Source of the DNA: Stylophora pistillata
Taxonomy: Eukaryota
DNA length: 64,000 nucleotides
Direction: 5' to 3'
Assembly: GCF_002571385.2 (NCBI RefSeq)
Contig: NW_019217897.1
Location: forward strand, 490,793-554,792
Shown here: in pieces, positions 257 to 47,600 of the stretch
How the letters are laid out: the number at the start of each line of letters is the position of its first letter
Position numbering within the stretch: position 1 is the stretch's first letter
Notes under the pieces: generated by a model
What the model saw: only the letters and a program-made list of their open reading frames with translations
Told to the model about the DNA's origin: nothing
The model's database searches: none
Translations under genes and position numbers: made by a program

Positions 257-937
257 CTAGTCGTGGTCGAATCTTGATCGAATGACCGAGAGTGTAAAAA
301 CACTGTTGCCAGCATTTTTTGGAGGAAAATCAGTTAAAAGAGTCCACAGAATATAAATTAAAAGATACTTTGGGAAGAGAGCTCTGAACCGTGCAATTGC
401 TCAAGCTTCACCAACCTGATAAGTTGCACCAACCTGAAAACGTTCCCTTCCTCTAAAGCCACTTGGATAAACCATGACGGTTTATGTAGAACAATGTCAA
501 TAAGTTGATTTTCAAAGCTATCAATGACAAAACGTAATTATGTTATCCTTATGCTTATGAACACAATATATTTATAGCAATCATGTTTCATTTCACTGTT
601 TTTTTCCACAGGCTGCATAGCTAACCATCCTCGCGAGTTGGTTCCAGTCGTACGAGAGACAAATTAAAGAAGAGTTCAGAGGCTGCCTACAGGATGATCA
701 AAACACTTACCAACTCTAAATCCTCTTAAGAATTTCTTCACTCCAGATGCACATGTACATTGTCCTGTTATCTGAGTTCTTGTAGACAATTAGTATAGAC
801 TCTTTGGAACTTTTCAAAACCGAAGCGATGGCCTCTGAAATGCAGCTGTGTTCAAAGACTAAAAATGACTGAAAAAAATTCAAACCTGTAATAATAACAA
901 TACATATAACACGGCTGTTCATTTGTGATAATCATTG

Positions 938-1372
938 AAAACGTATATGTGCACGATCCTCGAAGTAAAGCATCATTTAAGCAATAGTGAAAATCAGACC
1001 TGAAAAAAATTCAGGCCTGTACGGGATTCGAACCACATAAACCCGTAAGATGATAAATCAAACACAACGAATATATGAAATACCTATATCTAAACTGAGG
1101 TTATGAAACGTATATGTCCACGATCCTCGCAGTAAAGCACTATTATGTCGAATTGATTTAATCGCCTGCTCCCAGTTGGCTTGTTAGTTCAATTGATAGA
1201 GCGCTGCATTAGTATCGCAGCGGTCAGTGGTTCGAATCCCGTACAGGCCTGAATTTTTTCAGCTCTGATTTGCACTATTGCTTAAACAGTGCTTTACTAC
1301 GAGGATCGCGCACATATCCGCTTCATAACCGCAGTTCAGATATATGTATTTCATATATTCGTTGAGTTTGAA
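938..1372. mobile_element. Cluster of tRNA-derived SINE copies: one near-full + copy at ~1165-1372 and truncated - copies at ~938-1145
   Basis: tRNA-like head at 1178-1250 (GGCTTGTTAGTTCAATTGATAGAGC...GGTTCGAATCCCGTACAGGCC) followed by a tail. The reverse complement of the head/tail occurs at 938-1145, and another copy at 38656-38771. Confidence 0.75.
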
Positions 1373-1743
1373 TCATTGACAAGATTTTTCTTTGCTTCAC
1401 TCCTAAAAAAGATTACTCTTGAAATGTTTGTTGCTGCCCAGCTAAAGAAGTAACTCTAATTTAGATTATGGTATATTTGCCAATTCTTACTTCAGGCTCA
1501 ACTCGTGAACTTTTTTATTTAATTCGGAGCTGTTGAGTGTAAACCAATGAAAGCCATGCTCGTGATAACCTGTTAAAAAGCGAAACACATCGAAATTATT
1601 CGAAGTGATTTAAGTCATTCGGCCGGTTTGCTTTCGTTACAACAAATCGTTTGTAATGTAAAGACGGTTTAGTTTTGTTCAATTCACTTTTTGGTGGGTT
1701 ATCACGAGGATGGTTTTCGTTGAATGGAAACCATGCTATGATT

Positions 1744-2384
1744 GCTTACCAGTCGTTTCGTACCCATGGATCTTTCGAGACGAACCAAGACGATTCGTAC
1801 CCAGGCTCAGACATTTCGTACCCACTTTCGATCAGTTCGTACCCAACCCTCTGGTCGATTCGTTCCCAACAAATTATGACACAAAATTTTTAAAATAAAC
1901 ATAGACATTTATTTCGTTTATCCTAGTAGTCGCAAAAAAACTAATTTCTAATCACAGAAACTTTGAAAAGTTATCTTTTAGTTAATACTCTTGAAAAATC
2001 GTGACCTGGTTGACCCATCCTAATATATTTTGCCTACAACTACGCAGCGCCTACGACTAAACGTACCTATTCTACTCATTAAAAAAGCTAGTTTCTAAAT
2101 CATAGTAACGTTGAAAAGATATCTTACTCTTGAAAAATTGTGACCTAGTTCCCCCAGCTGACCTATCCTAATAAATTTTGTCCATTATCACGGAGCGCCT
2201 TACGCAGGCCACTGACACTTTTATTGTTAAGTAAAGTTCAACAATATAACAAATGAGATCACACTTATGCCTTGCGCGTGCGAGCGTGCATATTAATTTG
2301 TTGGGTACGAACTGATCGAAAGTGGGTACGAAACGTCCGAGCCTGGGTACGAAAGATCCATGGGTACGAAACGACAGGATACCC
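1744..2384. mobile_element. Foldback/MuDR-like non-autonomous DNA transposon with tandem-subunit TIRs
   Basis: Left arm has repeated TTCGTACCCA units (~1750-1872); right arm has the inverse TGGGTACGAA units (~2296-2378). Flanked by the 8-bp direct repeat CTATGATT (1736-1743 and 2385-2392). Confidence 0.8.
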
Positions 2385-2554
2385 CTATGATTACCTACCA
2401 AGAAAAGTGACAGAAATTGGAAATGAACGTAATATCCGTATTCGTTACATCTCCACAATAAGAAGAAATATGTGTATGAAGTAGATGTTCACGGTGCACA
2501 TGCTAGAGTTCACCAAGCAGAGTGGAATGGTTGATCAGTGGGGAAGTATAACAA

Positions 2555-2746
2555 GGTAATTATGATTTTTGATAATGTAAATTGGCCAGCTTCAAAGCTG
2601 ACGTTTCGGGCGTTAGCCCTTCGTCAGAACCCTTCACTCTGATGAAGGGCTAACGCTCGAATCGTCAGCTTTGAAACGTCAGCTTTGATAATCTTTACGG
2701 TGGTCAATTTGCGTTATCAACTAAGTTGACAAAACCATAAATTACC
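2555..2746. repeat. Palindromic Penelope-derived repeat with two opposed minimal hammerhead ribozyme motifs
   Basis: Minus strand CTGACGA-A-GGGC-TAAC-GCCC-GAAA-CGTC at 2594-2628; plus strand CTGATGA-A-GGGC-TAAC-GCTC-GAAT from 2639; inverted flanks. Confidence 0.75.
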
Positions 2747-2747
2747 C

Positions 2748-3640
2748 TCGAAATTTGGCCAAGTCGCGCGATTGCAATCTGGCTCGGTGCTCGCCTATGC
2801 AAGGGTCTGCTTGGAATCGTCCTGCACCTATTCCTAGCGGCTCCGATGGTTTGCTTACTATGATATCTCCTTAACTAATACAATATCCAAGGTGAGAGGA
2901 AAGTGTTTTTTCTTATAATAAATGCCCACAGTCTTATACATTCCTGTTATTTTAAGTAAGTTTCAAATGCCTCTTATCTTCGTACGAGAGACAAGATGGG
3001 AGCTCAATTTTTACAGCACTTTCCTCCTCGACATCGTTCTTTTGGTCAGCATCGTTATCAGGACAATTTTCGTCTTTCTCATTATTTTTCGCTTGGTTGT
3101 CGTACGTTACTGAAATAAAAGAGCCAGCAATATTTGAGCCACTGATGTTGAAATTGAATCGATATATATTCACCACTGCAACTCTAAACAAACAAGACCC
3201 AAGTAAGGAATCAAAATCAAGCTACAGGTACCTGATTCAGGAATACTGTTTCCCAGACAATCCTTCGCTCCCATCATCCAGATAAGGGTACTTGGCGCCA
3301 CATCAGGTTCATACCATGATTCAGTGCGCACCTTGGGTGTAAAACACTGAATCCTTGTAAGGTGAAGTTTGTCCTTTGTTGGTAAGTATCATCACGCGGT
3401 CATGATACTTACCAACTTACTGTTAGTCTGAGGAATAAAAAGAAAAACAATATTGAATAACCTTTATCGCACAGAAACGTCTCGCAGACTTGGAGCCTTC
3501 CTCTAGCGCCAAATGAAAACAAGAACCTCGGATTTTATCGAAGGAATGAATGCAGTGCGTCTTATTACAGCACTGGTCAGGTCAAGGTCTTTTTTTTATA
3601 CGTTACATTAACGACGAACTCAGACTTGTTCACAATCGCT
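2748..3640 (-). pseudogene. Fragments of an uncharacterised spliced gene divergent from FARSB, probably degraded
   Basis: Exon-like segments, some with AG/GT ends: ~3353-3232 IQCFTPKVRTESWYEPDVAPSTLIWMMGAKDCLGNSIPES; ~3110-2952 acidic VTYDNQ...; ~2870-2748 GDIIVSKPSEPLG.... Stops and frameshifts occur in neighbouring segments and no family is recognised. Confidence 0.3.
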
Positions 3641-4011
3641 AAAAATAAACATTTTTGAGGCAAAAGGACGACTATACACCTCAGGTAAAGTAATTCAACG
3701 TTTATTTATCATTTATTTATATACATAGTCAGCAATATATCACTATAGGTGAGGCAAACGGTAAATCTGGTACATTCACTATAAAACAACACACGGCTAC
3801 ACAAACAGACTATATTGGCCTGTGGTGTTTCGCGAGTTTCCTAAAACTGGAGACCTCTGTCTAACTTGAGCCCGCGTTCTGAGGAAGTTTCAGAAGACTA
3901 AAAAGACTGGGAACGAGTATAAATGAGGATTGGCTGATGAAATTGCCTTTAGGATTTATTAATTGATTCTTATGATTTTAAAATCTTTTCGTGAAAGGTT
4001 ATTCTTATGAC

Positions 4012-4890
4012 ATGCCGACCGTAGACGTTAAGCGAGACTTGCTATTCAAGGCCATTGGAAAGGTGTATAGTAAGTATTATCGGTTCAAATCGAATACACG
4101 TGGAAGGAATTTTCGAACGAATAGCTAATGAAGCAATGGGAAAGTGAACTAAGTCAGGAGTTGTTTGTTACTTGTTGCAGCTGATGAAGAGTTTGAAGAA
4201 CTGTGCTTTGACTTTGGACTTGAACTGGATGAAGTGGTAGGCATCATCTGCATTATATTTGTGCCGTATATTCTCCATTTTCCGTAGAAAAGAGTCTCGT
4301 TGTTAGTATTATTTGGGATTAAGAGAGTTATCTGGGCCTCCATTAATGGTTGGCTAAAAATTTGCTGTGCACACTATTTAATCAGGGATAAAATGCCTTA
4401 GGATGAATTCTTCTAACAATCAAACTGAGTAGAATCTGACCGTCAGATCTTACAGAGAAATCATGCGCACTTTAAACAAAAATCTAATGAAAGAATGATC
4501 AAAAATATATTTAAACACTCGCTGATTTAGTCACAACCCATACAGGAAATGGATACTGGGAGCTGCTTTCTGCACATACTCCATACCTCATTTTGTTAAT
4601 GTTGTTTTTGTTGATGTTTCTTTTGTGTGTGTGTGTTGTTGATGTTTTCTTTGTGTTGTCCACCAAGTTTCACATGGTGTGATTCTGAAATACACACAGG
4701 TTGAGGGGGAAGAGGAAGGTGATGAAGGAGTTATCTACAAAATTGAAATCCCAGCCAACAGGTGAACTTTGTCATATTTAAATTATGAGCAACTTCTGGA
4801 CTTATCATCTTGCAACTCTTCATAAATCCAGAAACATTCTTTTCAACTTTTATGCTCAAGGCCGTACTCTTCATCCCTTGTAGTACTAAT

Positions 4891-16188: not shown

Positions 16189-19100
16189 ATGTTGCCGCGA
16201 TTTTACGTTAGATTGGAGCATATCTTTGGTTTCCTGGCTGTGCTGTTGTCTACCATCAGCAGATCTTTGGAGGTGAGCAATACTTTTTTTGTTGTGATTC
16301 GTTTAGTTAGGTATTACAGGTCTTTTTAACAGAAAAGGGGAAACCCAACCCAGGGGTATGGATACACTATAGCTATTTTAATTCTTCAGTTTGGGGAAAC
16401 GTTTCGATAAGCTTGAATATACCGAGAATGGTCTCATTTCTTTAACTTGGGGAATTGCGCCAGTACAATTACAAACGTGTTGTGGGTTAAAATGGATTTT
16501 TAATTTTCTCCGTGAATGCGTCAAAAGCGAAGTGGACCAACTTAGATGCGCGGCATGATTATTAGGCTATTACCTGTTATGTCTAGAGTAGTGCGCACGA
16601 ACGTTGAGGCAGTCAGGAAGCTCTCACAAGACTAAGTTTTCATACAATTTTCCAATTGATGGAAAAATGCCTGGCTAAGTACTCTACAAATGATTTTCGT
16701 TTTCATTTACGAGAGTAAAAAGATAAACATTTTAAGATATTTTCAGTCTAAGGTCATATACTTTCCAAACAGTGGCTCTAAAATACCCAGAAACGAGCGT
16801 GTCTCATAGAATTCGTGTTTTAACGTTTAGGAAAATAATTCTTCCAGTCGATCTATTATTTCCTTGGCAGTCGAAAAATATGAGAATCTAATTTGTTTTG
16901 ACAGACTTGTAATCAAGTGCATTCCTTTGATGATTTATTTATTGAACCCTTTCGATGGAGAATTCCATCCAACCCATTTGGGAGTTCTTATCAAAACTGT
17001 CGGAAATGAATTCAAGATTGCATTCCCTGTGTCGATATTCAACGAAATTTAGCTTCAGAGAGATTTTGAGCGTTTGTTTTATTGAAACAGTTCGTGTCAT
17101 TTTCTTTTTCGTGCTCTGCCCGGCGTCCAGCCGTAAGCCACGAGTCGGATCAGACAGATTTTTGCAGAATTCTTCATCCTTTTATACCAGTTTTTTAAAA
17201 CATACTCCACATTTTCAAATGTCTCGTTTTCTTCTTATCCAGAACCCTGATATCCAATCTGACAGATGGAATTTGCCAGGAGAAAGTTATGAATCAGCCA
17301 TCTGGGAAAGAAGACCTTCAGTGCGTAAGGGGAGACCACCGGGTTAGTGAGCTGTCTTTGACTTCCAGCGGGAATCTCATCAGTTGATGTTTCTTTGTTC
17401 CAGATATACTTCAGAAACACCTGCTTATTCACACCCGACAACACACCCCATTCGAACAAAATTTATCTGATCGATTATTAAGGGACTGATAAAGACTGCT
17501 TTCCTTAACGTCCATCGCATACTTCATGGGTGAAATTTAAGACCCGACGAGAGTCAAACTACACTAATCTGTCATAAATACCTCGCTGTAATGCTGAAGT
17601 CCCCATACTCTTAGCGGGAGATTTTCATCTCCGGGGAAGGAGATCAAAAACGTCACGAGAAAATTATGAAATGTCAGAGTCCTTAGTCACCATTTCAAGG
17701 ATGCTTTTTCCACGAGTTTCTTCCTGTGTTTGGGATTTGATTCGTGCGTTTTGAACCAAATATTTTATAGATTCTCCAACCCTTACCTCCTCACGATGGA
17801 TTTTTGGCATACAGTGTATGAAACTTGAAAGGTCATGTTGGGTACAACTCGCTCACTTGTTCTGCTTATATTCGCCACACGTTGCATCCCCTCAAGCTTT
17901 ACTCCCGCTCCCGCCACTCGACATAGCCTTATTTGAGAGGCGAGTCCAGGTTTTCACCTGACTGATAGAGTAGTTTTCGTCCCATCATACCCGGGGGTAG
18001 ATTTTATGAAATTGGAGAAGCCAAATGCTGGGGATGGTCGACACACGTGGAGTTTACTAAAATCCAGTTGACTCGGTTGTATTACCTAAGAGGAGTGAAT
18101 ATGCCTTACGGTCACTTACCCCATGCTTCCGTTAGGCGCTTTATCAGTAAAGGACACTAATTTTCGCACAAAATGTAAAATCGGCACTGTGTGTGTTTCT
18201 CTAATTTCGCCTATAAAATTCTAACGGTGTATTTTCATATCGATAATCATCACTGAAAGACCTGAAAGAATGTGACAGTTTACATTTTCACACTTCTCGC
18301 AGAATCACCAACCTTTCATAGCGAGTGCATTACACGGCAACAGTGAAACAACTTAAAATAAGATCCTTGCTAATCATTCTTGTCTTAGTTATAGAAAGCT
18401 TGTCTTATTTTGACAGGTTGCTGCCCTCCTGAATTGTACCTTGGGTTTGGAAGCGCCACTTCATACAGTGATCATGACAGTAGTGTCACAACTGCTGATG
18501 CACCCTGCAGCAACCACGCCGACTTGGATCTACAGGAGGTTCAATTTAGGAGTGATAAATTGGGAAAGATGACTGATGCCATCACAATTGCCGTCTGGGT
18601 TAACTTGCGAACCATCCAAGGCATTCAGCCAATTCTGGTCGTAAGAGGACAAAATGGCGAGCTTCGATTTGAGGTTGCTGAAGGTCACGTTACTTGGTTA
18701 CACACCACGTTACGTTCACAAATACCAACATTTGCACTAATAAGCAGTGAACAAGTTTTAGAAAATAAATCGTGGACGCATATCGTAGCGCTATACGATG
18801 CTTACAACAGTCGCGCCGCGGTATTCGTGAACGGAAAGGAAATACTTCAGGGCCCTAGTGCTGGTGGATCACTGGAACTAACGTGGGATGAACTCCATGC
18901 TATCGGTCGATATAAAGTCAACGAGGGACTAGAGTTTAAATTGAAAGGGCTTCTTGACGAGTTCTACATCTACTTCTGTGCTCTTCCAAGAATGGTAATT
19001 CATAGACTTTTCCAAATCTGCCACATCGATGGAAAATGCGCTCCCTCGCGACCAGGCAAGTTTGAAATCATTTCGTTAGCAATCCGCTCTAATGTATTGG

Positions 19101-32600: not shown

Positions 32601-35600
32601 ATACTTGCCCTTATATCACTTGTAACTTCTCATGAAGACTCACCTCTCCAAACTCGTGCTAATACTGGATGAAGGTTAAGATTGACATTTTGTTATTGTG
32701 TTCAGGATTGAGAAGTATTAGCGAATGTTACTTTATGAATTAATGCAAGTCCACTAACGACGTCACTTGCCTGCGTTTTAACACCGTTGCTTCCCAGCAT
32801 TCTTCAATCAATTCTGGTCAGTAATGTTCGTGCTCCGTACATAAATTTACTTTCTTCAATGCACAGTGAGCTCTTTTCCAACCATTCCTCGTGTCCAATC
32901 TTCGATCCTGTCCATCTCCCGAACAGTGTCTCGTTATCGAGCTAATGAACAGTTGACAGTTAATAAGAAGACATTCATAGTAAACATATTCACATTATTT
33001 CAAGGTGCGTTAAACCTTATGTTGGTAATCCAACCGAGCCAGGAGAAAAATGTAACTTAGGTGAGAATTTAACAGATGTTTATTTTTTTTTAAGTTTTCC
33101 TATATCAGATAGAATTGTTAAACATGGAATTTTTTAACTAAATGTATATTTTAAGACAAAAAATGGTCAACTGACAAGCTGTTTTACCATCTGCAAAGTT
33201 GATGCAACATTAAAACGATTGGTATATTTGCCTCAAACATATTTTTTAAGTATACCACATCATTAGGGATATTCAAGGCTTAAATTTGTTTAATTCCAAT
33301 AATGACCAGAAAGGCACCCTTATCATACTGAATCAGTGATTGTTATCATTTCAATTAGGAATTCACTCTCACCTTTTTTTTATTTTATTTTGTTTTGCTT
33401 TGCTTTTGTTGTTGTTGTTGTTGTTACAAATTTAGAGGTCGACTGTCTATGTGATGTTCGTGGCTCGATCAACAGTTCTTGTGATCCTATTACCTCGCAA
33501 TGCTTTTGCAAGGTGGGTGATAGAAAAAACAAATCCTATTTAAGGCAACCCGCGTAGTGAGCGGTTTTGTGTGTGTCCCTAAAAACAATGAGCGACCAAG
33601 CGGCCAGCGGAAAAATATGCTACCTCTCTTTTCCGTCTCAAGCCTCTCCCGGCTTTGCCCCTTGATCACGGCCACGCCGCTTGACGCTTTAACTGTGGTA
33701 TACCGAGTCTTGCAAGATATGACCATGTGTTGGGGGAAAAGAATGGGTGTAAGGAACAAAATAAGCCTTACCACTACAGAAAATCAAAACAGGTGTGTTC
33801 TTTATTTCGAGACGGACTTCGTTTGGCTGAGTCACGACTTCATGATGTCATAAGGGCACACGCTAGTGCTGAGAAGACGACACGACCCGTTCAACTTCAT
33901 ATTTCACTTTTTAGCAGGATACTGTTACATTTGGCACGCGACTTGCGTCCGAAGTTATAGTGGTCAGTTTAGCAAGTGGTGATATGCTCTGTTGACCTAT
34001 AATATCGAATAATATTTTTGAAGTGTCTCAATGACGCTCGCGCACTTTTTAATTCAGCGCGTTGTTTTACTGTTCGAGTGTTGTGTCGGGAATTTCACCA
34101 AAAAAAAAGAGGTAGTGAAATTTCTAATGAACTCATCTCTTTCCCATTCTATCGGCCCTTTCTTAGCATGTCAGTGTATTTTCAAATTTTTGATTTCTGG
34201 TGACACACCTTCTTAAATTGGAATCATTCATGCGGCGTTTAAAACCGTTAGAAGTAATTTTTTCAAGCCTTGTTTCCACTACTACATAAGTAGGGTTTAT
34301 TACTGCGAGGATCGCTTTCATACATTCCGTTAGAAGGGTGTTAGAAGAATAATTTATATAGACTTTTATTTTAACTAAAAAGTTTCGCGTGCTGAGCATT
34401 TGTTACCCACTGCAGACCTCCTAAACCTAACTCCATTTCTCATCTGTAGTATACATTTTTTTTTCTGTTCAATTGAATAGCGCCAAATATAGATTGCTCT
34501 TTTCCTTTTCTTTTTCGATCTCCCTGTGTATGGGGCTTTCCGTCCATCTAAAAAGCGTTCTTTTTGTGATTGACGATACGAAGTTTAAAAAATTAATGTA
34601 ACACGAGCTACCAGTCTTCAAGACGTTTTTTTTCGACCAGATAACCGTGACTCGCTCGTCAAAAGGACTTTCGAGAAATTAGCATTTCGGACAGTGTGTA
34701 AAGTTCGTCTCCCATACAGACATCCTTGTTATCGCATCCTTTGCTGTGTGGAGGGTAATTTGCTTCTTCCGTACTTGATAATCTTTGAAAGGTAGATATA
34801 GCAGTAAGTAAATAATCTGGGCTCAGTTTTGTTGGTTGAAGTTCAGATTTCTTATGTTACGCTGCAGTTAACTTTCATCCAAGACGTGACCCGAGGAAGT
34901 TGTAGACGCAAAAAACGGTATCTCAGGGATCTTTTTAAACCTATTATCGTCATTATGTACCATTAAATGGGTATTTCTTATCCACAGCACAAATGTTTTA
35001 CGTTTAATTGTATGCCTGTTATTTCTTCCAATTAGTAGTATCGTTTTGTTTATAATAACCGAAGATTTTAGCATTTGAGTTTCCTTTTCAGTATCCTTCA
35101 TTAAATGTTTTTCGCTATTTAAAAACGCTGTTCTACACAATAGCCTGTAATTTCGTTGACATTCATTTTCGTTCTAGCTAAGTTTTAGATAGCATACCTG
35201 GTCTGTAAGAAAAGCAACTCTAAAAGGTAGGCAAATATTGGTTTGTTGTAAGCAAAACAATGCATTGTCTTTCTTTTCAAATTGTCAATTTATAATGTGA
35301 TCACTTCAGTGAAAGCATGTTAGCTGTGATAAGATCGGATGAGAGCGAAATTCCACAGGAGCAACAAAAGTTGTCGTTCCCATGCATCGAGATATCAACT
35401 TCCTGAGAAACCGGACGTTCCCACGATCCTTGATTTGAAAAATGTCTTTTTTCGGCTGGGCCAAAACCTAACTATGTATACAACTTTTCGGGAGTGTAAA
35501 ACATTGTCTGGATTTTTGAATTCTTCAATCACTCTTTTTCGTGACCGAGGGTTAGGTTAGGAAGGCCATTGATAACCTTTCCATCATTAATTTGATCTAG

Positions 35601-38600
35601 TAATTGAAAGTTACTCGTCTAAAACTCTTCTCAAGCTGTTCTTAAAAGAAAATTATTTTTGAACGCTGTGGATAATTTGCGTAATGCAAACCAATACGTA
35701 AACTTAACGAAAGTTTCTTTCAACTTAGTTTCCTCCTGACTTTGTCTCGTCGGGCGCTTTGTTGTGCAAACGAGGTGCGAAGATGCCGACAACGTAACCA
35801 GATCATCACTTATCTTGCGTGCTTTTATCACACAGACAGACCATGGCAAGAGCCAAAGGCTGTCGGATTGAATTTCAATTGACACTTTCCTTAGTTGTCA
35901 TGCTCATCAACTGTGACGGGATTTGAGAATCTTTCTGTCGATCAAACTATTTCCAGATTGAACTCCTATTTCAAGGAACTGAACTCTCCTAAAGAGCCTC
36001 AAAAACGGATTGTAATCTTGAGTGTCATCTAGTCAGCTATCTGTCATAGAGACCGTTTGGGAAATCTTCCGAGGGAAAGCTGCTTATCCATTTAGACATA
36101 AAATGAATCACTACTTCTTTCTGATTACTGCTGCTTTCCTGCTTTCTCTGGTTTGGATTTCGCCCATTTCATCCAGGGTAAGCTAAGCCACTTATTGATA
36201 GATTAGCCCTCCTAAACCTAAAGTCATGTTTCTGAAACAACTAATGGTACGGCCGGAAAAGGTTGTATACCAGATACTAGTGAATTCGCGAATTAAAGGG
36301 CATCTACAGCTGCTCCATATTACACTCTCAAAGAGTGTTACGACTGCATGATGTTTTATGTAACGTAAGTAAGGTTTTTCCTCTTACACCATTTGAGGAG
36401 CTGTTCTTACAGAAGCAGAAATTAAAGATTAAGCTTTTAATTAAAACCCGTACATGCCCACCCAGACAGAGGTGATTTCTCGAACAGATGGGATAATTTT
36501 CAGATCCATCGTTTAGTTTTTTTCCAAACTAGGGAAAGCTTCGTTGTGCTCATGTCTCCAGTTGAGTTTTAAACTAACTCCGTGAAATTGAATGGTTGTA
36601 ATTTTTTATTGGTGAAGTATGCGTGCTCCATTGAGAGTGACCTTTCACCTGCTTGGTTCTGTCAGTTTAATGAAATGAATGGAAGAAAACTCAGACTTTT
36701 TGCTGTCATATATTTATGTTGTAACATTAACCATCACTTCCTCTTTGCTATGGCATTATTCCATTTTCCCTGTACCTTATGGTTCCTTCATGGATCTCTT
36801 CCTCCCTGTTTTATGTAAATGGTTTTATACACGCACTTTTTCCTATCTTCTTTTCACATTTGATCAATCTTTGATTTCGCAAGGACCTTGAGCTAATGCC
36901 CAATGATTGCCATTTAGCAGAGGCCAAAATAAACCTAGTATTGTGACATAAGCTTATCTTACCACCCGACAGGGCCGACATGTTGTTTGATAGGAAGTGC
37001 TCGTGCATTATTATCGTTTACAATGTTGAGTGCCTTCTGACAAGTGACAGATTAATGTAATAGTTTAGTTGACGACACTTCGCTGTTCCCGGTGAAATAG
37101 TACGCTGGGACTAAAAAACAAGATCAACAATAATTACGAGAAGCTCTAATCTATTTATAGCAACGTTTGCTGGAGGTAACGTTGGCTGGGGGCAAGATAT
37201 ACCCTATAAAATATTTGGTGGATATTTACAGGGGCCGATATCTCTCTTTCGTTAGAAATTGGATACGAATCAAATATCAATTTTCCGAAGCAAAAGCAAA
37301 GCCAGCAGCACCAACTTTCTTCATATTAGAGCCCAAAGCCCAAAGGTTTCTCTTTGAAACAAAAAAAAAATAATCCCCTTGGCTCCATCTTCTTAAAATG
37401 ATGTTTAATAATAGGATGAAAATATGCTGATGCTGTGAGATCTTTAAAACGAAAGATGACTCCACTTGGCGTCAAAGGATGATTTTTTAGAGCCAAGAGC
37501 TAATTGATGACTCGTAATAGGTCATAGTACAGTGTCAAGTACAGCCGGAGTCCAATGAGTAGAGAGAGGCGACTATTTTATGTTACAAGATCGATAACTA
37601 TTTGGCTTTTACCTGCACAGATATACTGATTCTTAGATAGAGATGTTTCTTTAGTTTCTCGTCAAGGAACAAGGAGCAAGACTGGAACAATATCCTACAA
37701 ATGAATCAGTCGATTCATGTAAATGTAACAATTTCAGTGCAGAGCCCGAAATATCACGCAATTTATTGTCACTCGATCTCGCTCAAACAACTATTAAGGT
37801 GATTCCCACGAATGGCCCTTTCGGCTACAGCTACTTTCGTAGCCCTCAAGTGGATCAATCACTTGATGACAACGTCCAACTTGACCTCTAAGACAGGTTG
37901 ATTTTGGGATCCTCTTGAATTTTAAAGCAACTACAAACCAATGATTTTTTGATATGTCAAATGGCTCCTTCATTCTATCAGAAAGAAAAAAAATCGTCGA
38001 AAAACATCGTAAAATTTACACTGAGACTGGGGTCTCCTTCATGAAGGATTTTTTTCTAGATCAAAGAAATGAACTTTCCACTTTCATCAAGTTATTTTCA
38101 CGGTTTCTGAACAGCGTAGTCAACATACAACGCATTGAAAACAGCTAAAATTCCATCAACGCCGGAAATAGCGCAATAACCTGACTTATGTTGGATTGCA
38201 TAACCAACAAAAATATCGCCATGTTTGCAGAAAGGTTGGTTAGAATTAATATCTAGCAAAATGCATTGCAACTCTTTCATATTGCCAGTCTCTGTTGTAC
38301 TCATGCAATTATTGCTCGCCTCTTGTCTCCACAGAAGCATGTTGAAGGAAGTAAGTGCGACAGGTGTAAGCGATCCTTCTTCAATTTGCAGTCGGACGAT
38401 CCCGAGGGATGCGTGCCTTGCTTCTGTTTTGGAGTCTCTGCTGTTTGTAAATGCGCTGATTATTACAAAGACATAGTAAGTAAATCATGACTGCTATAGT
38501 ATTATTAACCGTACCCAATTCGCAATTAGCCAATCAAAAGCTGGAGATGAAAAATAATTTTCAGGTCAAAGGCTTCGCACACTCTGTCGCTATAAAGAGG

Positions 38601-41600
38601 CATACAGCATTTCGGAAATAGCCTATTGTTTTCAGTCTTTTAAAAAGCTTGAGCATGAGAGTAATCTTCGCAGTAAAGAACACTACTTAAGCAGAAGTAA
38701 AAATAAAGCCTGGAAAAAATTCAGGCTCGAACGGGAGTTGAACCCATAACCTTTGCGTCGATACCGGAGCATAAAAAAAATTGGCTTCTAAACTTGATTT
38801 TCACCGATCATTTGAGGTCTATTTGATAATTCCTTTAGGAGACCGCTGAAGTAAATTCCCTTTTGCAAAAGAGTTGAGAATTGGGTTCTTTGAAACTTTC
38901 TCCAGGTTCTCTCTCTCAAGGCGACCTGTTTTATACCAAAGGAAGAAACGATTCGGATGCGATTTAAAAAAAGCTTAGCAATGGCGGAATCTTGATGGAA
39001 AATTCTTCCAGAAAACATTTTTTCTCGTACCTTGCTATACTACGCAAAATGTCCTTAGTTCCTGCAACTTGGTAATCTCTTAATTACACTTCAAATTTAT
39101 ATTTCAGATTGGCTTGCGCATCGCCCTGTTGGACGGTCCAAACTACTTACGTCTCTCGGACTTATCACAGGACTCTATTATAAATTCTGGCTACAAAATA
39201 GAGGATGATCCGGGACATTATGTTTATAAGTTTGACAAACCACCGGCAAAGACCTATTACTGGTTTTTGGGAGAGGAATTTAGAGGGGACATGGTGAGTT
39301 CACTCTGTAGCTTTCCAACCTCGACTAGTCGATTCCTTTTGCCGTTGACTTGTTGGCGACGGAGGCGAGTCACCTTTCAAAACGTCTTAAACTCCTGTTG
39401 TTCGTGTTCACTTGATAACGTGGTATAGGCACTGCTAACTACGGCCTTCAGTAGGAGCTCTGAAAGCTCCACCATCTATTTTTGTTTTCCGCAGAGGGAA
39501 CTCCGACCGTAAACATCCCTTTCCCGCTTCATATGATAACGTTTCTACTCGTAAAGATCAAAGGTAAATTGACTGATCTCTTTTGATTTGTTTAGATCAC
39601 AAGCTATGACGGTATCTTACGATACACAGTTTCTCACGAAATGCAGCCCGGTGGTGAGCTGACCTCTGAAATTGACGTCCAGTTGAAGGTATTATTTGAA
39701 TTTTAACTCACCAATAAGTGGTGCTGTCGTTCGTAAATTCACGGTGCATGCTCTTGATTCTTGAATGCTCTGTAATGTTAATCAAACGTTTTTAGTCCAA
39801 TCTTCATTCTTGGTCTCGTTTTGTTTGTCGGTCTAGTTTCGAAAATTATTGTGCTGGAGGTATCAGTTCCAAGTTTTGCGCTTTTCAGACAAATCTGGTT
39901 TCCGTTGCCACTAGTGTAATTTCGTGTTTTGCGCAGAAACGCCAAACGTTCACAGCTACAATTATTATCAATTTTCTTTCTTTTTAAAGCGAATAGATTA
40001 TTGCGGCTGTGTGAAAAGTTGCGCTTCTCGTCGGTGTATTGCGCTCAAACGCTGTTTTTTCCAATAGAAAAAAAAAAAAAAAAAAAAAAAAACAGGAAAG
40101 AGCAGAAGAACTCGCTTCCAATCAAAAACGCATAATGCAGATTGCCTTGGCTAAGAAAATGGAATTATTTCTAAAATGGGTCGCACACCTGCAACTCGGT
40201 AAAAGAACCAGAGAAGCGTACCCGCTAATTTTAAGTTAACAGTAACGCTTCTTTTTCGATTTACATCTGAATTTGTTTCGATGGTGTGTATGGCGAATTT
40301 TTTTTTTAGGGAAGAGGGAGAGTTCTAATATTTAATCGTAGAAGAAAACGAGAGGCAGGAAAAACATTTACAGAGGGCCTTAAACTATCAGAGGTGAGGA
40401 GTTAACCAAATAGTCCATGCAACGTTACAGACCTATTACATGTTCCAAGCAAGCAATCCATTTTTCGACATCGAAGGCAATCTGTTGACTACAGGTATAT
40501 CCGAACGAATAATCTTGTCAGTTGCTCTGATTCATGGTGTTAGTCATCAATTGAAGGTATTTAAAGTTAAAGATAACATTTTTTGTCAGGAGGAAGGAAC
40601 ATAACAACTACGTACAAGCTAGTCTCTTTTCTGTAAAAGTCAAAATATCTTGTTCAATCATACAGGGTTGGCTGAGGTACCCGGATAACGCTAGAACGAC
40701 CAGAGATGTTGTGATGACAGTTTTGTCCGCTGTGGAAAGCATCTTGGTCCGTGCGACATACAGTACAACTACTACACAAGCCAGGTCACAATTTAGTTAC
40801 TTTAACTGTAACATATCTCTTTTTACTCTACTGTAACATGTTCACTCATAATTTTACACCCTCTAATCAGTGAAATACTTCATATTCCATATATTATTTA
40901 CACTAATATTTACTGCAAGAACAAAATAACTTACGCAACTAAGATTACACGCAACGCTATAAAAAGGTTCTCGAGTTCCCTGTGTTACCTTTTTTTTACC
41001 TGTAGGTAGCCTTGCGTTCACGATGTGAATCAGATCAATAACGTTATTTTTATTTTTCACCAGCCTTTATGCAGTCAATTTGGAGAAAGCTGTACCTCAA
41101 GAAACGGGTCATAGAAAAGCTGAGAAAATCGAACTATGCACATGTCCACCGGAGTACACTGGAACATCTTGTCAGGTAATCTTAGAAGCTCACAATAGAA
41201 AATAGTTATGTGAAGCGTTAGAGAATTCTAGCATTCGTTTATTTCGTTGTTTCAAATCTCGAAGACGCACCTTTGTTCGTTTGAACTTCTTTCTACTTAA
41301 GAAAAATGAGATTCGATGCTCGACTTTTCGAACTTATAAAGAATTTTTTTCACTCAGTGAAAGTTGATAAGCAAGCTTTTATTTTGGAATATGTGTAGAG
41401 GTCCATTCATATGCAATGACAAATTAAAAAATCTGAGCAATGTCTTGCTTAGACGTTACGCAAATCCTTCTGTACGAAGTGCGGTCATAAGACCATGTCA
41501 GTTTTGGTATCATTTTATTTTGCAGCGCTGTGCTCGTGGATACACTCGGACTTACCCTGCAGGCTCAGATTTCTCCCCTTGTGTTCCATGTACTTGTAAT

Positions 41601-44600
41601 CAACACTCAAAAGAATGTGATCCAGAGACAGGAAAATGTTTAGTAAGTAAATACCACTTAAGCGGTAGTAATTGCGAGGAACTGCATTAAATTGCCGGTA
41701 CCCATTTAAACACCTGGGTGGAGAGAGAGGCAGTGTGAGAGTAAAGTGTCTTGCCTAAGAACAAAACACAGTGTTCCGGCCGGGTCTCGAACCCGGACCA
41801 CTCGATCCGGAGTCGAACGCACCAACTATGAGGCCACCGCGCCTCTGCTGAGGGTAACTCTGCGAGGGACTGGCATCACATCCAGGGGGAGTATAAATAC
41901 TCCTAGTCTCTTCATGCTACAGAAACCGGAGTTAAGCACCGGCCTGATGGGCCACTACGCTCGTAAACAGACTTTACCAATTGCGAGGAACTGCAATGCC
42001 TCAAATGTAGTCCGATACACTGATGCATATCCCAATATGCATCAACAGATTGGGAGCAGGTTAATTCTTACAAATGCAAAGGCTATATACTTTTTCATTA
42101 GAATCTGTCCAAAGACAGTTACTCGGCACGTTATGAACTAAGTAGGCTTCTAAACCCTCGGGGTCGGTTATTGAAACAAAGTTTAGCTGTTGTTTGACAA
42201 AACCTCGTCCTAGGGAATCCTCAATTTCGCTGAACCTTTGATTGGAACGTTTTTTTGGGTGTTAAGAGGGCTGAAAGCTAATACTAATAGTAGAAGGACT
42301 TTTATCTAATCTAATCATCCCTCTTCTAGACAAAGCCTGAGGTCCACTGATTCCGTAAAATCGCGGTTTGGGTTAGACCTCGTGTAAATAACCGGTCCTA
42401 AGTACTTTCAATTGCTCCTCGATCGTCTCGGCCGTCATTTCTCATTTAATGAAATGAATGAAATCTTTATTTAAAACATGGTAAAAATATCAGTATGACA
42501 ATAGAAAACAAAGAAGAAATTCATCTTAAGTAAAATTTTCTATTAACTGGTTTACATATTTGCCGTGCGGGAGCCCAATACAGAGAGCCATTTATCAATT
42601 CTTCTCTTGAAGATGCGTAGAGATTTTGTAGTGCGAATATGCTCAGGAAGATCGTTCCAATGAGAAGCTCCGCTATAACTGAAGCTACGTTTCAGGAAGT
42701 CAGTTCTTGGTCTCGGCAAGTGCAACCTTTGGCTTGCGCCATGAAGATCAAAGGACAAGGTTCTCGGGGTGAACATGTTACAAAGATAATTTGGGGCGAG
42801 CTTATTAACGCATTTATACATTAAATTTGCCGTTTGCTTCGTCCTTCTTATTGAGAAGTTATCCCAGCGGAGAGAATAGAGAAGATAGCTGGAGTTCGTA
42901 TTATAACTTGACTTAGTAATTACTCTGGCAGCGCGATTTTATAGTTTTTGTAGTTTCTTACTCAGCTGTTGAGACAGGCCATCCCAAACAACACTACAGT
43001 AATCAAAATGGGGTTCGATAAGACCTTTGTATATTTTGATAGCGGTGTGCATTAAAACGAAAGGTCTAATTCGCTTCAGTGCACCGATACTGGAAGAGAC
43101 TTTTTTTGAGATTGCGTGTATGTGCTCCATCCAGGATAGGTTTTCATCTTTTATGATAGATAACTATTAGAGATAGTTTTTCGAGGTGGGACATTCTATA
43201 TCTAAATATTCGCTTTTTTGTCAGAAATGTGATCACAATACCGCAGGCTCCAGGTGCGGGAGATGTGCAATCGGTTTCTATGGCGACGCGACTAAAGGCA
43301 CACCTCAAGATTGCCAACCATGTCCATGCCCTTTAACAGTCGCTTCGAATCAGTGAGTAAAGAAGTGGATTAAAAAAATTGGTGCCGGTTACAAGCTTTC
43401 TCCATCAATAATTTCCTCTCTTAAACAGGTTCAGCCTGACCTGCAAAATAGAGTCAGACGGTCTACCTACCTGCACTGGGTGTCAAACTGGTTATACAGG
43501 CAGAACATGTAATAGGTAAAGTCGTCTTAGTTAAAACTATGAAGTTTGTAAATACGAAATGTATAATTTTGCTGATAATTTTCTTGTGATGTTCGCCTAT
43601 CAGATCACTTTTTTAGATCGTTTGGCGATCGTTGTAATGTCAAATTTATCCTGTTTAGATGTGCTAAGGGATATTCCGGGGATCCTAAAAAACCTGGCCG
43701 AAAGTGTATCAAGCTACCAGGTAAGATAACTGGTCATTTAGATAGAATCTAGTGTTCGGTTGTTGGAATGCTACTAATGAGAACATTGTGCACACGAATA
43801 CAATGAACTGAATGTTGTCATTTCCTGGTTAAAAAATAAATAACCGAAACTCGTAAATAGGCGAGAAAATCCTTTTACAACCATTTGGTTTTCTATGAAG
43901 TTGACCATGCACAGATCCTTTGCTATATTCAGTAAAACCGCTCACTTCCATGATAACCAGGGTTAAGGTAAAGGTATCTGAGTGGTAATCTCTGCTCAGA
44001 GTCTGATTACAAATTAGTATGCCTATCGAAAAACAATAACATGTGTCTCGCAAAAAAAAAGCCTTTTATGTTCTCTGTCAGTAACTTTGTATTGCTTGCT
44101 TCCGTAGTAACGAGATGGGTATTCCTCGAAATATGGTTTTAGATTAATATCTTAACAAAGAACACTAAAAAATATCCCTTATACCAAAAAATTGACAGTT
44201 TGCTGTGTCATTCTTTTTTTTTAAGCGGGATTCTTACCAATTGTTATGATCAGGCCAATGAAAAGAACCAAGACAGAGGGAGATGACGTTAGGTTTTACT
44301 GCTTTGCCAAGGGAAAGCAACAACCAAGAATAAGTTGGTCTCGAGAAAATGGCAAAACGTTACCCAGCAGGGCTGTTGTGTCTGGAAAAATCATGTCGAT
44401 AAGTAGAATAAGGAAAGAAGATGAAGGAGAATACGCGTGTACTGCGAGAAACATATATGGCTCTGAAACTGGTACAACACAGCTGAGGGTAGAAGGTTAG
44501 ATGCACAAATTATTTTTAGCTCGATTTTATTTACGTGTTCAACCTTTTCAGTCACAACCCCTTATATAGTGTTATTAAAGTGGCTTCTTGTTTTTTATCA

Positions 44601-47600
44601 AAATGTAGTTAAGGTGATTTTTACACAGGTCTTTTATCGTTATCTGTTAAAGTCTTCCATAACCATTAGATAGATGATCGTTTTCCTAAATATTTGGAAG
44701 GATGGTTTTGATTGCCTTTCTCTTTACCTCCTATATCGTGTTCTGGAATTAGCTCGCCGTGTGGATCCCATAAGCGTAACAGTTTCGCCAAAAGTCCTTC
44801 ACGTTCTTTTGGACCAAAAAGCTCAGTTCAAGTGCAGAGCAAAAAGTGTGACCGAATACACCTTACAGTGGACCCAAGGAGTGTACGGAGCACTTCCTGA
44901 TGGGGCCGAAAATGATAATGGTGTTCTAACGATCGATCGCGCGCGGGCCATCCATGGAGGGTCCTACACATGTACCGGTAAAAATGCCAACAACGAAGAT
45001 ATGGTAACCGTCCAACTGAGAATAGGAGGTAAGAATGATTCATACCTAGTTGCATAGCTTCGGACATATTATAGTCTATATTAACCTATTTCTTTTTTCC
45101 TTGTCAGTAACAAAGCCTCAGGTCCTTATAAGCCCTGCCAGTTTGAGCGTGCAAGAGGGAGATTCTGCTCAATTCCGCTGTTCGGCGTCGGGATTTCCAG
45201 CTCCGGAACTTCAGTGGCATGGTGGTCCTGGCGGTGAATTGCCATCGGAAGCGAATACAGCCAACAGTAATGGGCTTTTGATCTTTGACGCGGTGAAAAA
45301 AATTCACAAAGGAGAATACTTTTGTACAGCATCTAATTTGGGCGGAATCTCCAGCACTGGAACGTTCTTAAATGTCTCAGGTACGACGGTATTTTAAACT
45401 AAATGAAATTTTCATGGTCACTCTCTCCCTGTGACAGCATGCTTTCATTTTCACCTGTTTTCGTAGCTTCTGGTTCTCCCCCTATAATTTCGGTTGTGCC
45501 CAGTTTGATGACCGTTTTGGAAGGTGAAGAAGCCTCGTTTCAGTGTACGGCAATAGGGGACCCACCACCCACAATTCGATGGTCACGTGAGAAGGGCCAG
45601 CTTTCTCCGTCCTCTACTTCTTTAAATGGTGTTTTGAGCATTTTCCCGACAAAAGTTGAAGACGGCGGTGCATATGTTTGTACAGCAGCTAATAAAATCG
45701 GAGTGGATGGGGGTTTGGTCACTCTCACTGTCGAAAGAGGTAAGTGAACACCATTGAACAAAATCTTTTCTGTGTCCTTTTGGAAAAGCGGTAAATACGC
45801 GAGTTAGACGGAGACATACGAAGGCATGTTGCAAAAGGTAGTAAAAAATTGAGTCCTAGACAATTCCTTAGATAAACCCAGAATATTAAGTCAAATATCA
45901 CAAGTGCGCGTCGAAAATAGGCACTAGGGAGTCAAAATTAAAATAAAAATATTTTTCCTAATAATTTTGAATGGCGTGTTGACCCTTGACAGTCCGCCCT
46001 CGACGTTTTAATGTCGACCCTTGAATCTTGACAAAAAGGCAAAATAATCATAAACGACCTTTTAATTAAGACATCTGTTTCTCAACGTGCCCTTTAACAC
46101 ATGTTTTTTCATTCATCATCTCCCGTTTCAAAGCGGATTAGCTGTGCAGCTGTTTGCCCTCTTGTCTCTTTCACTCAGCATAAACAGGAAAAAGGAAACG
46201 ACTGCAAGCAGGATGATTGAATATGAGTCGTGTGTGCACAGTTGCACGTAGTAAAAAGCATGGCATCGGTATGCTTCAGCATCTTTATCGTAAATGGAGC
46301 GCTTGTGTCGCTGAAAACTGCTATAAGAAAACAAAGTTTTTCTGTGATATTCAATTTTTCGGACCTAGTCGTTTGAGTAATGGGTCGGAAATATAATCCC
46401 ACGATTTTAATACTAGGTTTGGGGAGACCTGCTTTAGACTTTTTCAGATATGTTTTGAGTATTCTCGTTACCTGTTTGCTGTATAATGTCTGGATATTAT
46501 AAGGACAAGTTACATGTCAATCACTTCTGGGAATTAAAAGGTTAAAGAAAAGCTTAAACATTTTCAAGGTAATGTGAAACAATAATTCTTGTTTTTAGGA
46601 GACTGATTATTAACTAATTTTTGTTCCTTTGAACGAGATTAAGGGGAAAAGGATTATAATAAAAATGTTAGCAACAAAAGGATACTAATTGGAAAAGGAA
46701 AAATAAATAATATCGGCTCATTCAGGACATAGTTAGTCTAAAATGTTCCTTATCTTCAGATACCTCCGTGCCTCCAACTGCGTTGGTGTCACCAGCAAAT
46801 CAAACTGTCGATGAAGGTTCTTCTACCAGCTTATCGTGCCAAGTGACAGGAGATCCTTATCCCTCCATAGAATGGAGGAAGGTTGGTGGCGAGTTACCAA
46901 ACAACCACTCTATTCTCGGTGGATTATTGGTAATCCAGGAAATAACGAAAGAGGATGAAGGCATGTATCTATGCTTAGCTCAAAACAAAAAAGGTGTCAA
47001 ACAAGTTACCGCCTTTATCAATGTCAGAAGTAAGTAAATAATTCAATCTTAAGTTAAGAGTTATGACCAACCAAACATTGTTTGATATTAATGATGGGAT
47101 AACAACGAGCTTTACTTTTGTTTCGCAATCGTGAAAGGAAGGTCGTCATGTAAGGGGACCTCTCATATTTTTTCTTTACCGGTGCAATTTGACCAGACAT
47201 TACTTAAATTACATTACAAGTGATTAAGCATTTTTCTAATGTGGTTCGCTCAGAAAATTTCTCTATCGGTGATACTACAACTCTCTTGATGGAATACATT
47301 GTCTGTTTTTCACAAACATATCTCGACAGCGCGTTTTGTTTCTGAAACAACCGATTAAGTTGCAGCAATGATGGTATGTCATACGTACCCTTTCAGGTAA
47401 AGTGTCGCCAAAGATAGAAATCATGCCGGCGAGAAGGTTAACCGTCACTGGAGGGGAAACAGTCATTTTCAAGTGTGTAGTCAAAGCCGGTAATCCTCCT
47501 CCTGTGGTGGTTTGGGAAACAGAAGAGAGTCAACTATTGAATAGTAGCGATGATGGGGCGTTGGTGATCTCCCCAGCAAACGGTAACAGCCAGGGAAAGT

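What the first reader, a model, noticed from the sequence alone, without database searches (positions are those of the whole stretch)
36103..36183. Second signal-peptide exon in a perlecan intron: possible internal promoter and short isoform
Seen: within the unusually long intron 33513-38334 there is a 25-codon ATG exon with a hydrophobic core and a consensus phase-0 donor (GTAAGC), matching the phase of exons 38335 and ~39108. Inference: a second promoter makes a secreted LamB3-12xIg-3xLG mini-perlecan lacking the mucin half, or the locus is splitting into two genes. Splicing to 38335 would leave half an LE module with an unpaired Cys, whereas splicing to ~39108 would not.
Basis: partly seen in the sequence, partly recalled or inferred. 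Interest (0 to 1): 0.75.

Follow-up and report, generated by a model that had tools for sequence, protein, structure and literature searches.

The report
Conserved alternative first exon, coral perlecan
A short start-codon exon inside a long intron of a coral perlecan-like gene is conserved in two other corals and is spliced onto the next shared exon in one of them, so it probably starts a shorter secreted form of the protein, although four RNA data sets from this coral showed no use of it.

Summary
ATG 36103 to 36177 gives 25 codons with a hydrophobic core, followed by a GTAAGC donor in phase 0, inside the RNA-confirmed 4,822-nt intron 33513-38334.

The pattern alone is weak evidence: a loose scan finds 7 such ORFs in the window. 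In this coral, 4 laid RNA runs show no depth at 35001-36400 and no joint from 36177. The joint 33512->38335 appears in 3 of the 4 runs.

Comparative data change the reading.
- A genomic contig of another coral (L011) aligns to 35706-36238 (68% over 550 nt, E 3e-47). At the aligned place it keeps ATG, a 22-codon hydrophobic ORF and a GTAAGC donor. Six other introns give no match.
- A spliced transcript contig of a third coral (L013) carries the homologous upstream sequence, an ATG and 22 hydrophobic codons. These are joined in frame to the homologue of exon 38335-38475.

Best reading: a conserved alternative first exon giving an N-terminally truncated perlecan, as in LAMA3A. The start site, secretion and use in this species are not shown. 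It is a new member of a known kind, of moderate interest.

The parts
35706..36102 (+). Conserved non-coding block just upstream of the start codon. It is a candidate promoter and/or 5'UTR of the short form.
   Evidence: blastn finds window 35706-36238 matching L011 1226-1741 at 68% over 550 nt (E 2.6e-47), and window 35709-35930 matching L013 90-310 at 70%. In alignment A2 the upstream part is 280/395 identical to L011 and 237/406 identical to L013. The sequence is present in the L013 transcript contig. Six other introns (4,032 nt) give no hit. There is no ATG in the last 203 nt before 36103. The start site is not mapped.
36103..36177 (+). Alternative first coding exon: ATG plus 24 codons with a hydrophobic, signal-peptide-like core.
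   Evidence: Homologues lie at the aligned place: L011 1615-1680 (22 codons) and L013 487-552 (22 codons). All are open, their lengths differ by multiples of 3, and their 12-residue hydrophobicity maxima are 2.63, 2.56 and 2.85. There is no RNA depth here in the 4 laid runs of this species.
36178..36183 (+). Phase-0 splice donor GTAAGC.
   Evidence: L011 has the identical hexamer and a similar intron start at 1681. L013 is joined exactly there to the exon-B homologue. Use of this donor in this species has not been observed.
36178..38334 (+). Intron that the short form would remove (2,157 nt).
   Evidence: This is inferred from the L013 junction and from the acceptor used by the long form. The L011 counterpart is 1681-3642, 1,962 nt.
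38335..38475 (+). Shared exon B (141 nt, phase 0 to 0). It holds the last part of one laminin-EGF module and the start of the next.
   Evidence: The joints 33512->38335 and 38475->39108 are seen in RNA. Its homologue is 79-83% identical in L009-L011 and L013. In L013 it follows the hydrophobic start directly.
39108..39293 (+). Shared exon C (186 nt), the start of the laminin B (domain IV type) region.
   Evidence: See for the joints and the loose end behind 39293, and (Laminin_B at L013 ORF residues 121-246).
33436..33512 (+). Exon A, used by the long form only and skipped by the short form. Its 5' end is not resolved to the base.
   Evidence: An X7 contig piece covers 33433-33510 and is joined to 38333 (cut +2, GT..AG). 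The joint appears in X7 (depth 30.4), X21 (2 reads) and X24 (2 reads).

Best explanation
36103-36177 is an alternative first coding exon of the coral perlecan-like gene. It sits with a conserved upstream control/5'UTR block (about 35706-36102) inside the long intron 33513-38334.

Proposed mechanism: when transcription starts in this intron, the exon's GTAAGC donor is spliced to the acceptor at 38335. Translation from ATG 36103 then gives a hydrophobic leader followed by the end of one laminin-EGF module, the last laminin B unit, the Ig array and the laminin G/EGF tail. The long form skips this exon, going 33512->38335.

Shown:
- the sequence features;
- skipping of the exon by the long form in this species;
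- conservation of the ATG, frame, hydrophobic core, donor and upstream block in two other corals;
- an in-frame splice of the homologous exon to the exon-B homologue in one other coral.

Inferred:
- that transcription starts inside the intron;
- that the leader works as a cleaved signal peptide;
- that this species uses the exon, perhaps in a stage, tissue or condition not sampled by the laid runs.
For: (1) Transcript evidence. L013 is an unnamed JGI contig of 3,761 nt found. It has one ORF, 487-3051, whose first 22 codons are hydrophobic and run in frame straight into the exon-B and exon-C homologues. Its ORF matches 14 collinear window exon segments from 38308 to 47034 with no intervening sequence, so it is spliced RNA.

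(2) Positional homology. L013 90-310 and 391-430, upstream of its ATG, match window 35709-35930 and 36006-36045, so its start is the positional homologue of 36103.

(3) Genomic conservation. L011 keeps ATG 1615, 22 open hydrophobic codons and GTAAGC in phase 0. This lies 1,962 nt upstream of its exon B, which has an AG acceptor.

(4) Specificity control. The same scan over both strands of L009-L012 (43.5 kb) finds 1 hit, and it is this one.

(5) Pattern of change. Nucleotide identity in the coding part is only 40/66, 34/62 and 31/62. Even so, the frame, the length in multiples of 3 (75, 66, 66 nt) and the hydrophobicity are kept.

(6) Background. Six other introns (4,032 nt) show no blastn match at E<=1e-3 to L009-L013. 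The intron holding the exon matches L011 in 7 patches, the largest around the exon.

(7) The region is single copy, so it is not a transposon.

(8) Precedent. LAMA3A starts at an internal site in intron 38, and the long form skips its exon 39 (PMC2790989, introduction passage).
Against: In this species, 4 laid runs show zero depth in every bin from 35001 to 36400 and no joint from 36177. The runs were X1 contigs (RNA by guess), X7 polyA RNA contigs, and X21 and X24 raw RNA reads.
- Intronic contigs of depth 2.3-3.9 were reported beside exon depths of 30 (X7) and 77 (X1). A form above roughly 3-8% of the long form should therefore have shown up in those two runs, unless the tool's filter dropped it.
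- The raw-read runs have only 2 reads each on the long-form joint, so they have little power.

The L013 contig runs 486 nt upstream of its ATG, collinear with genomic L011 from its 7th base, and holds 3 upstream ATGs (-194, -132, -81). Its 3' end also runs into an unspliced intron. The upstream part may therefore be pre-mRNA of the long form, and no start site is shown.

The leader has no Lys or Arg before the hydrophobic core in any of the three species.

The non-coding block is more conserved than the ORF, as expected also for an intronic enhancer.

Two protein-collection searches found no transcript-derived ORF with this start. Those collections hold only exon-sized genomic ORFs for this gene, so the blank says little.
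Confidence: 0.68

Rival explanations
1. The conserved block is an intronic regulatory element (an enhancer of the long form). The junction in L013 is then a minor or aberrant use of a strong donor in partly processed long-form pre-mRNA, and the ATG ORF makes no protein.
For: Conservation is highest in the non-coding part: 71%, 58% and 63% upstream against 61%, 55% and 50% in the ORF. L013 continues 486 nt upstream, collinear with the genome, and has upstream ATGs. Its 3' end keeps an intron, so the assembly holds pre-mRNA. No use was seen in 4 runs of this species. A second conserved non-coding block lies at about 36890-37075 in the same intron.
Against: This reading does not explain why three diverged species keep an ATG at the aligned column, an open frame to a phase-0 donor, length changes only in multiples of 3, and a hydrophobic core, while 39-50% of the aligned bases in the ORF differ. 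It also does not explain why the only hit of the scan in 43.5 kb of other coral contigs is the orthologous one.
Confidence: 0.14
2. The exon is real in other corals but is silent or decaying in this species. Its intact look here would then be residual.
For: There was zero depth and no joint in the 4 laid runs, 2 of which have a detection floor of a few percent of the long form.
Against: The ATG, the 25 open codons, the donor and the upstream block are all intact. Neutral intron sequence at this divergence is not alignable at all, so the lineage has been under constraint. Only 4 of 24 listed runs were laid, and their stages are unknown to me.
Confidence: 0.1
3. The feature is a chance intronic ORF next to a chance donor, with no function.
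For: Seven look-alike ATG ORFs occur in the window by loose criteria. There is no RNA support in this species.
Against: The feature is conserved in position, frame and donor in L011 and is spliced in L013.
Confidence: 0.03
4. There are two genes. The downstream unit would be an independent gene with its own promoter, and the long transcript would be read-through or a fusion, as the reader's second option has it and as reported for Trichoplax perl 1 and perl 2.
For: L013 shows a transcript that begins, as far as it was assembled, with the internal exon. Trichoplax perlecan is transcribed as two genes (PMC4398486, sections 14, 15 and passages).
Against: In this species the joint 33512->38335 is in a polyA RNA contig of depth 30 that continues 445 nt further upstream, and in raw reads of 2 more runs. 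The Trichoplax split lies within the Ig array (domain IV), not at this place.
Confidence: 0.04

Closest known systems
LAMA3A / LAMA3B (laminin alpha3 short and long forms)
   Same: In both cases a large basement-membrane gene with laminin-type modules has a short form that starts at an internal site in an intron with its own first exon. The long form skips that exon, and the short protein lacks the N-terminal half (PMC2790989, introduction passage).
   Different: This is a different gene family member and a different phylum. Here the internal start site is not mapped, and use of the exon is shown only in another coral. That LAMA3A's first exon encodes its own signal peptide is recalled, not read.
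Perlecan isoform diversity in other animals (Drosophila trol, C. elegans unc-52, human HSPG2 'miniperl' and mast-cell forms)
   Same: The same gene family makes several size forms. Trol has 25 predicted variants of 2,853-4,489 aa (PMC10328508 passage). unc-52 has several isoforms, and human short forms are reported (PMC6266596 passages).
   Different: In the passages I read, none of these is described as starting from a signal-peptide exon in the intron before the last laminin B unit. The unc-52 forms are described by length only, and 'miniperl' concerns domain I. I found no description for cnidarians: and a term search of PMC4398486 that found no 'isoform' or 'signal peptide'.
Trichoplax adhaerens perl 1 / perl 2
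   Same: A perlecan locus has two separate promoters, shown by 5' RACE (PMC4398486, section 15).
   Different: There, two genes lie 13 kb apart and could not be connected by PCR, and the split lies within the Ig array. Here a continuous long transcript exists, and the internal start lies in domain III.

Membership tests
Alternative first exon driven by an internal promoter (LAMA3A type) | Transcription starts inside an intron of the long form. | tested here: inconclusive
   No start site is mapped. L013 reaches 486 nt upstream of its ATG, collinear with the genome, which could be 5'UTR or pre-mRNA. There are no reads in this species.
Alternative first exon driven by an internal promoter (LAMA3A type) | The exon's donor is spliced in frame to the next shared exon. 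| tested here: inconclusive
   This is met in another coral: L013 codon 22 is joined to the exon-B homologue. It is not seen in this species in 4 of 24 listed runs.
Alternative first exon driven by an internal promoter (LAMA3A type) | The long form skips the exon. | tested here: met
   The joint 33512->38335 appears in 3 of 4 laid runs, with zero depth on 36103-36177.
Alternative first exon driven by an internal promoter (LAMA3A type) | The exon and its flank are conserved across species beyond the intron background. | tested here: met
   See for the conservation, (6 other introns, no match; 1 hit in 43.5 kb, the orthologous one).
ER signal peptide | A hydrophobic core of about 7-15 residues lies near the N-terminus. 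| tested here: met
   The 12-residue Kyte-Doolittle maxima are 2.63, 2.56 and 2.85. Runs free of D, E, K, R, H, N and Q are 21, 11 and 16 residues.
ER signal peptide | A positively charged n-region comes before the core. | tested here: not met
   There is no K or R before the core in any of the three sequences. As recalled, this is common but not obligatory in eukaryotic signal peptides.
ER signal peptide | A predicted cleavage site exists and the protein is actually secreted. | not testable with these tools
   No signal-peptide predictor and no experiment are available here.
Perlecan / HSPG2-like proteins | The module order is laminin B with laminin-EGF, then an Ig array, then laminin G with EGF. 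| tested here: met
   The L013 ORF has Laminin_B at 121-246, 2 EGF_laminin stretches and 5 Ig stretches. The best solved relative is a perlecan core protein fragment, 9i5a, at E 1e-83. Of 8 window ORFs scanned, 5 matched: Laminin_G (2), EGF, and Ig (2).

The most novel reading that the evidence does not exclude
Stony corals may have kept a switchable internal promoter in perlecan across the divergence seen here (exon C is only 54% identical in protein between two of the species). The roughly 400-nt block, unusually conserved for an intron, would then be the control region. Its product would be a mucin-less mini-perlecan whose mature N-terminus carries a partnerless cysteine, able to cross-link or dimerise. 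It would be made only at a stage or in a tissue missed by ordinary colony RNA, such as larval settlement, the skeleton-anchoring epithelium or wound repair.
Probability: 0.15. Interest if true: 0.7.

Novelty: new member of a known kind. Interest (0 to 1): 0.5.

Why it matters
Perlecan is a core basement-membrane protein, and cnidarians are used to infer how animal matrices arose. A conserved internal start would mean that corals can make two very different perlecans from one gene. One carries the long mucin-bearing half; the other keeps only the last laminin B unit, the Ig array and the cell-binding laminin G tail.

This gives a concrete, testable handle. The junction 36177->38335 and the 35.7-36.1 kb fragment can be used to ask where and when each form is made. 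It also matters for annotation, because gene models and expression counts for this locus should allow two starts.

The general mechanism, an alternative first exon, is ordinary.

Tried and rejected
Chance ORF. This was my first reading after (odds stated). I rejected it.

Transposon or repeat. The own-genome search with the whole intron listed 49 matches: the intron itself, and 48 matches to one roughly 70-nt repeat at 34252-34342. None fell at the exon.

Known RNA family. Rfam, at E up to 1 over 33513-38334, gave 0 matches.

Second conserved block (about 36890-37075) as a structured RNA. The fold z-score was -0.78, and 1 of 35 predicted pairs was compensatory in a two-sequence alignment. This gives no support.

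Cassette-exon reading. The only nearby AG (36094-36095) would give an 82-nt exon out of frame (read by eye), and L013 shows no upstream junction.

Searching for annotated or transcript-derived coral proteins with this start:
- The representative search with exon C found 16 proteins at E<=0.001. The best 7 are exon-sized ORFs read through into introns of coral genomic contigs, from ENA and Logan and without names.
- The search for homologous proteins with the L013 ORF, region 1-140, scored 0 of 89 candidates.
- The same tool with the first 200 residues gave 5 proteins, all exon-sized genomic ORFs.
- These blanks say nothing about long annotated proteins.

The first metagenome scan, with exon C alone, gave 595 pattern matches and 0 relatives.

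Literature:
- Searches.
- Passages read in PMC4859157, PMC10328508, PMC6266596 and PMC2790989.
- Sections 14 and 15 plus passages of PMC4398486.
- I found no description of an internal start in a cnidarian perlecan.
- Supplements were not opened. Figure 1 of PMC4398486 is not held.

Not done:
Exons were searched one by one.
- The identities of L011 and L013 are unknown to me.
Full report
**What is in the sequence.**

At 36103 an ATG opens 25 codons ([25 protein letters not shown]) that end at 36177. They are followed by GTAAGC.

The neighbouring exons were read directly and confirmed by RNA.
- An exon ends at 33512 before GTGGGT.
- Exon B runs 38335-38475 (141 nt, before GTAAGT).
- Exon C runs 39108-39293 (186 nt, before GTGAGT).

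The intron 33513-38334 is 4,822 nt. It is the longest gap among the 14 collinear exon matches mapped downstream (approximate boundaries).

**Is the pattern more than chance?**

On its own, barely. I ran a loose scan: ATG, at least 15 open codons, a hydrophobic 12-residue window, and a GTRAG donor in any phase. It gives 9 hits from 7 distinct ATGs on the two strands of the window, 6 of them on the + strand.

Dinucleotide shuffles of the intron give 0.063 per intron, with at least one hit in 5.3% of 300 shuffles. Shuffling removes the T-rich tracts that make hydrophobic ORFs in real introns, so I take the empirical rate as the fairer null.

The stretch is single copy. The own-genome search with the whole intron listed 49 matches. 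One was the intron itself, and 48 were to a roughly 70-nt repeat at 34252-34342.

**RNA of this species.**

The look-up of sequencing runs listed 24 runs. I could lay 4 of them once, on 33401-39400: X1 (contigs, RNA by guess), X7 (polyA RNA contigs), and X21 and X24 (raw RNA reads).

- The long-form joint 33512->38335 is in X7 (contig depth 30.4), X21 (2 reads) and X24 (2 reads).
- The joint 38475->39108 is in X1 (depth 77), X7 (30) and X24 (1 read).
- Every bin from 35001 to 36400 has zero depth in all four runs, and no joint leaves 36177.
- Intronic contigs of depth 2.3-3.9 were reported elsewhere in the intron. In X1 and X7 a form above a few percent of the long form should therefore have been visible, subject to the tool's warning that a filter drops some records.
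- The two raw-read samples are too thin to say much.
- In X1 a 7,551-nt contig starts exactly at 38334 and exon A has no depth. I cannot interpret that.

**Related corals.**

A representative search with exon C returned only exon-sized ORFs from coral genomic contigs.

A first scan of JGI metagenome contigs found nothing. A second scan, with an alignment of those ORFs (A1), gave five loci.

*L011* is genomic: it has introns, with exon B at 3643-3783 behind a TAG acceptor and exon C at 4237-4425.
- blastn aligns window 35706-36238 to L011 1226-1741, at 68% over 550 nt (E 2.6e-47).
- At the aligned place L011 has ATG 1615, 22 open hydrophobic codons and GTAAGC in phase 0. The first bases of the intron are also alike.

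*L013* has a single ORF, 487-3051 (854 aa).
- It matches 14 window exon segments in order, from 38308 to 47034, with nothing between them, so it is spliced RNA.
- Only its 3' end runs on past a GTGAGT into an unspliced intron.
- Its ORF begins with 22 hydrophobic codons that continue in frame straight into the exon-B homologue, then exon C. Next come the same residues that the loose end behind 39293 shows in this species.
- Upstream of its ATG, L013 90-310 and 391-430 match window 35709-35930 and 36006-36045.
- The L013 start is therefore the positional homologue of 36103. There it is spliced to the 38335-type acceptor, not to the 39108-type one.

**Controls.**

- Six other introns of the gene (4,032 nt) have no blastn match at E<=1e-3 in L009-L013, which cover several of them.
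- The same ORF scan on both strands of L009-L012 (43.5 kb) finds one hit, the L011 homologue.
- Within alignment A2 the upstream block is 280/395, 237/406 and 248/394 identical. The ORF is only 40/66, 34/62 and 31/62 identical. Yet the ATG column, the open frame, lengths of 75, 66 and 66 nt, and the hydrophobic core are kept.
- A fast-changing but frame-keeping and hydrophobicity-keeping pattern is what signal peptides show (established knowledge, recalled).

**What the product would be.**

- The L013 ORF carries one Laminin_B domain (121-246), two laminin-EGF stretches and five Ig stretches.
- Residues 22-394 align to a solved perlecan core-protein fragment, 9i5a, at E 1e-83.
- Of 8 downstream window ORFs scanned, 5 matched: laminin G (2), EGF, and Ig (2).
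- The short form would therefore be the last laminin B unit, the Ig array and the laminin G/EGF tail.
- Exon A ends just after what I read as the fifth Cys of a laminin-EGF module, and exon B starts before the sixth.

**What remains open.**

No start site is mapped.
- L013 extends 486 nt upstream of its ATG, collinear with genomic L011 from its 7th base.
- It holds upstream ATGs at -194, -132 and -81. The nearest upstream ATG is at -203 in this species and at -131 in L011.
- This fits either a long 5'UTR or long-form pre-mRNA reads assembled onto a shorter true first exon.
- A start within about 80 nt of the ATG would give a clean leader in all three species. That is inference only.

The leader has no basic residue before its core. 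Use in this species is unobserved.

The main rival is an intronic enhancer with an incidental donor. It explains the non-coding conservation and the silence here, but not the conserved ATG, frame, phase and hydrophobicity.

**Comparison with what is known.**

The closest architecture is LAMA3. There the short LAMA3A transcript starts at an internal site in intron 38, and the long form skips its exon 39 (PMC2790989, introduction passage).

Perlecan genes of flies, worms and humans make several size forms (passages in PMC10328508, PMC6266596 and PMC4859157).

Trichoplax perlecan is transcribed as two genes, split within the Ig array (PMC4398486, sections 14 and 15 and passages). That is a different place and a different state from this locus, where a continuous long transcript exists.

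Four literature searches and these readings gave no description of an internal start in a cnidarian perlecan. Supplements and figures were not seen.

**Verdict.**

A short-isoform first exon is probable, and the 38335 acceptor is favoured. The promoter is not shown, use in this species has not been seen, and the two-gene idea is not supported here.
- This is a new member of a known kind.
- I did not build or search a joined exon model of this species.

Noticed in passing
window 34252-34342: This is a roughly 70-nt dispersed repeat. 48 other copies are listed in the genome, out of 542 first-look candidates. The same spot has RNA depth of about 80-480, with loose ends on both sides and a strand bias opposite to perlecan. 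The reads therefore probably come from other, expressed copies rather than from this intron.
   Followed up: partly
window about 36890-37075 (L011 2388-2530): A second conserved non-coding block lies in the same intron: 78.5% over 149 nt (E 2e-29), with 83% column identity. A low-depth X1 contig lies at 36900-37050. There is no Rfam match and no fold signal (z -0.78). It may be a regulatory element.
   Followed up: partly
window 34725-34779, 35300-35358, 36367-36408, 36590-36649: Smaller patches of this intron also align to L011 at 75-83%, whereas six other introns do not align at all. The whole intron looks unusually constrained.
   Followed up: no
window 38334 (run X1): A 7,551-nt contig of run X1 starts exactly one base before exon B. 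X1 shows no depth on exon A although exon B has depth 77. This may be a branch in the assembly graph, an allele below the 95% threshold, or a dropped record. It remains unexplained.
   Followed up: no
window 35809-35830: Two GATA-like motifs (CTTATCT and TTTTATCA; the motif names are recalled) sit in the most conserved part of the upstream block. Both are kept in L013, and the second is kept in L011.
   Followed up: no
L013 3045-3761: The transcript contig runs on past a GTGAGT donor into about 700 nt with no match to the window or to L011. This is a retained intron, so the 854-aa ORF end is not the true protein end.
   Followed up: partly
window 16189-16272 and 53971-54045: These are other ATG, hydrophobic, donor-flanked ORFs on the + strand found by the loose scan. 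They were not examined further.
   Followed up: no
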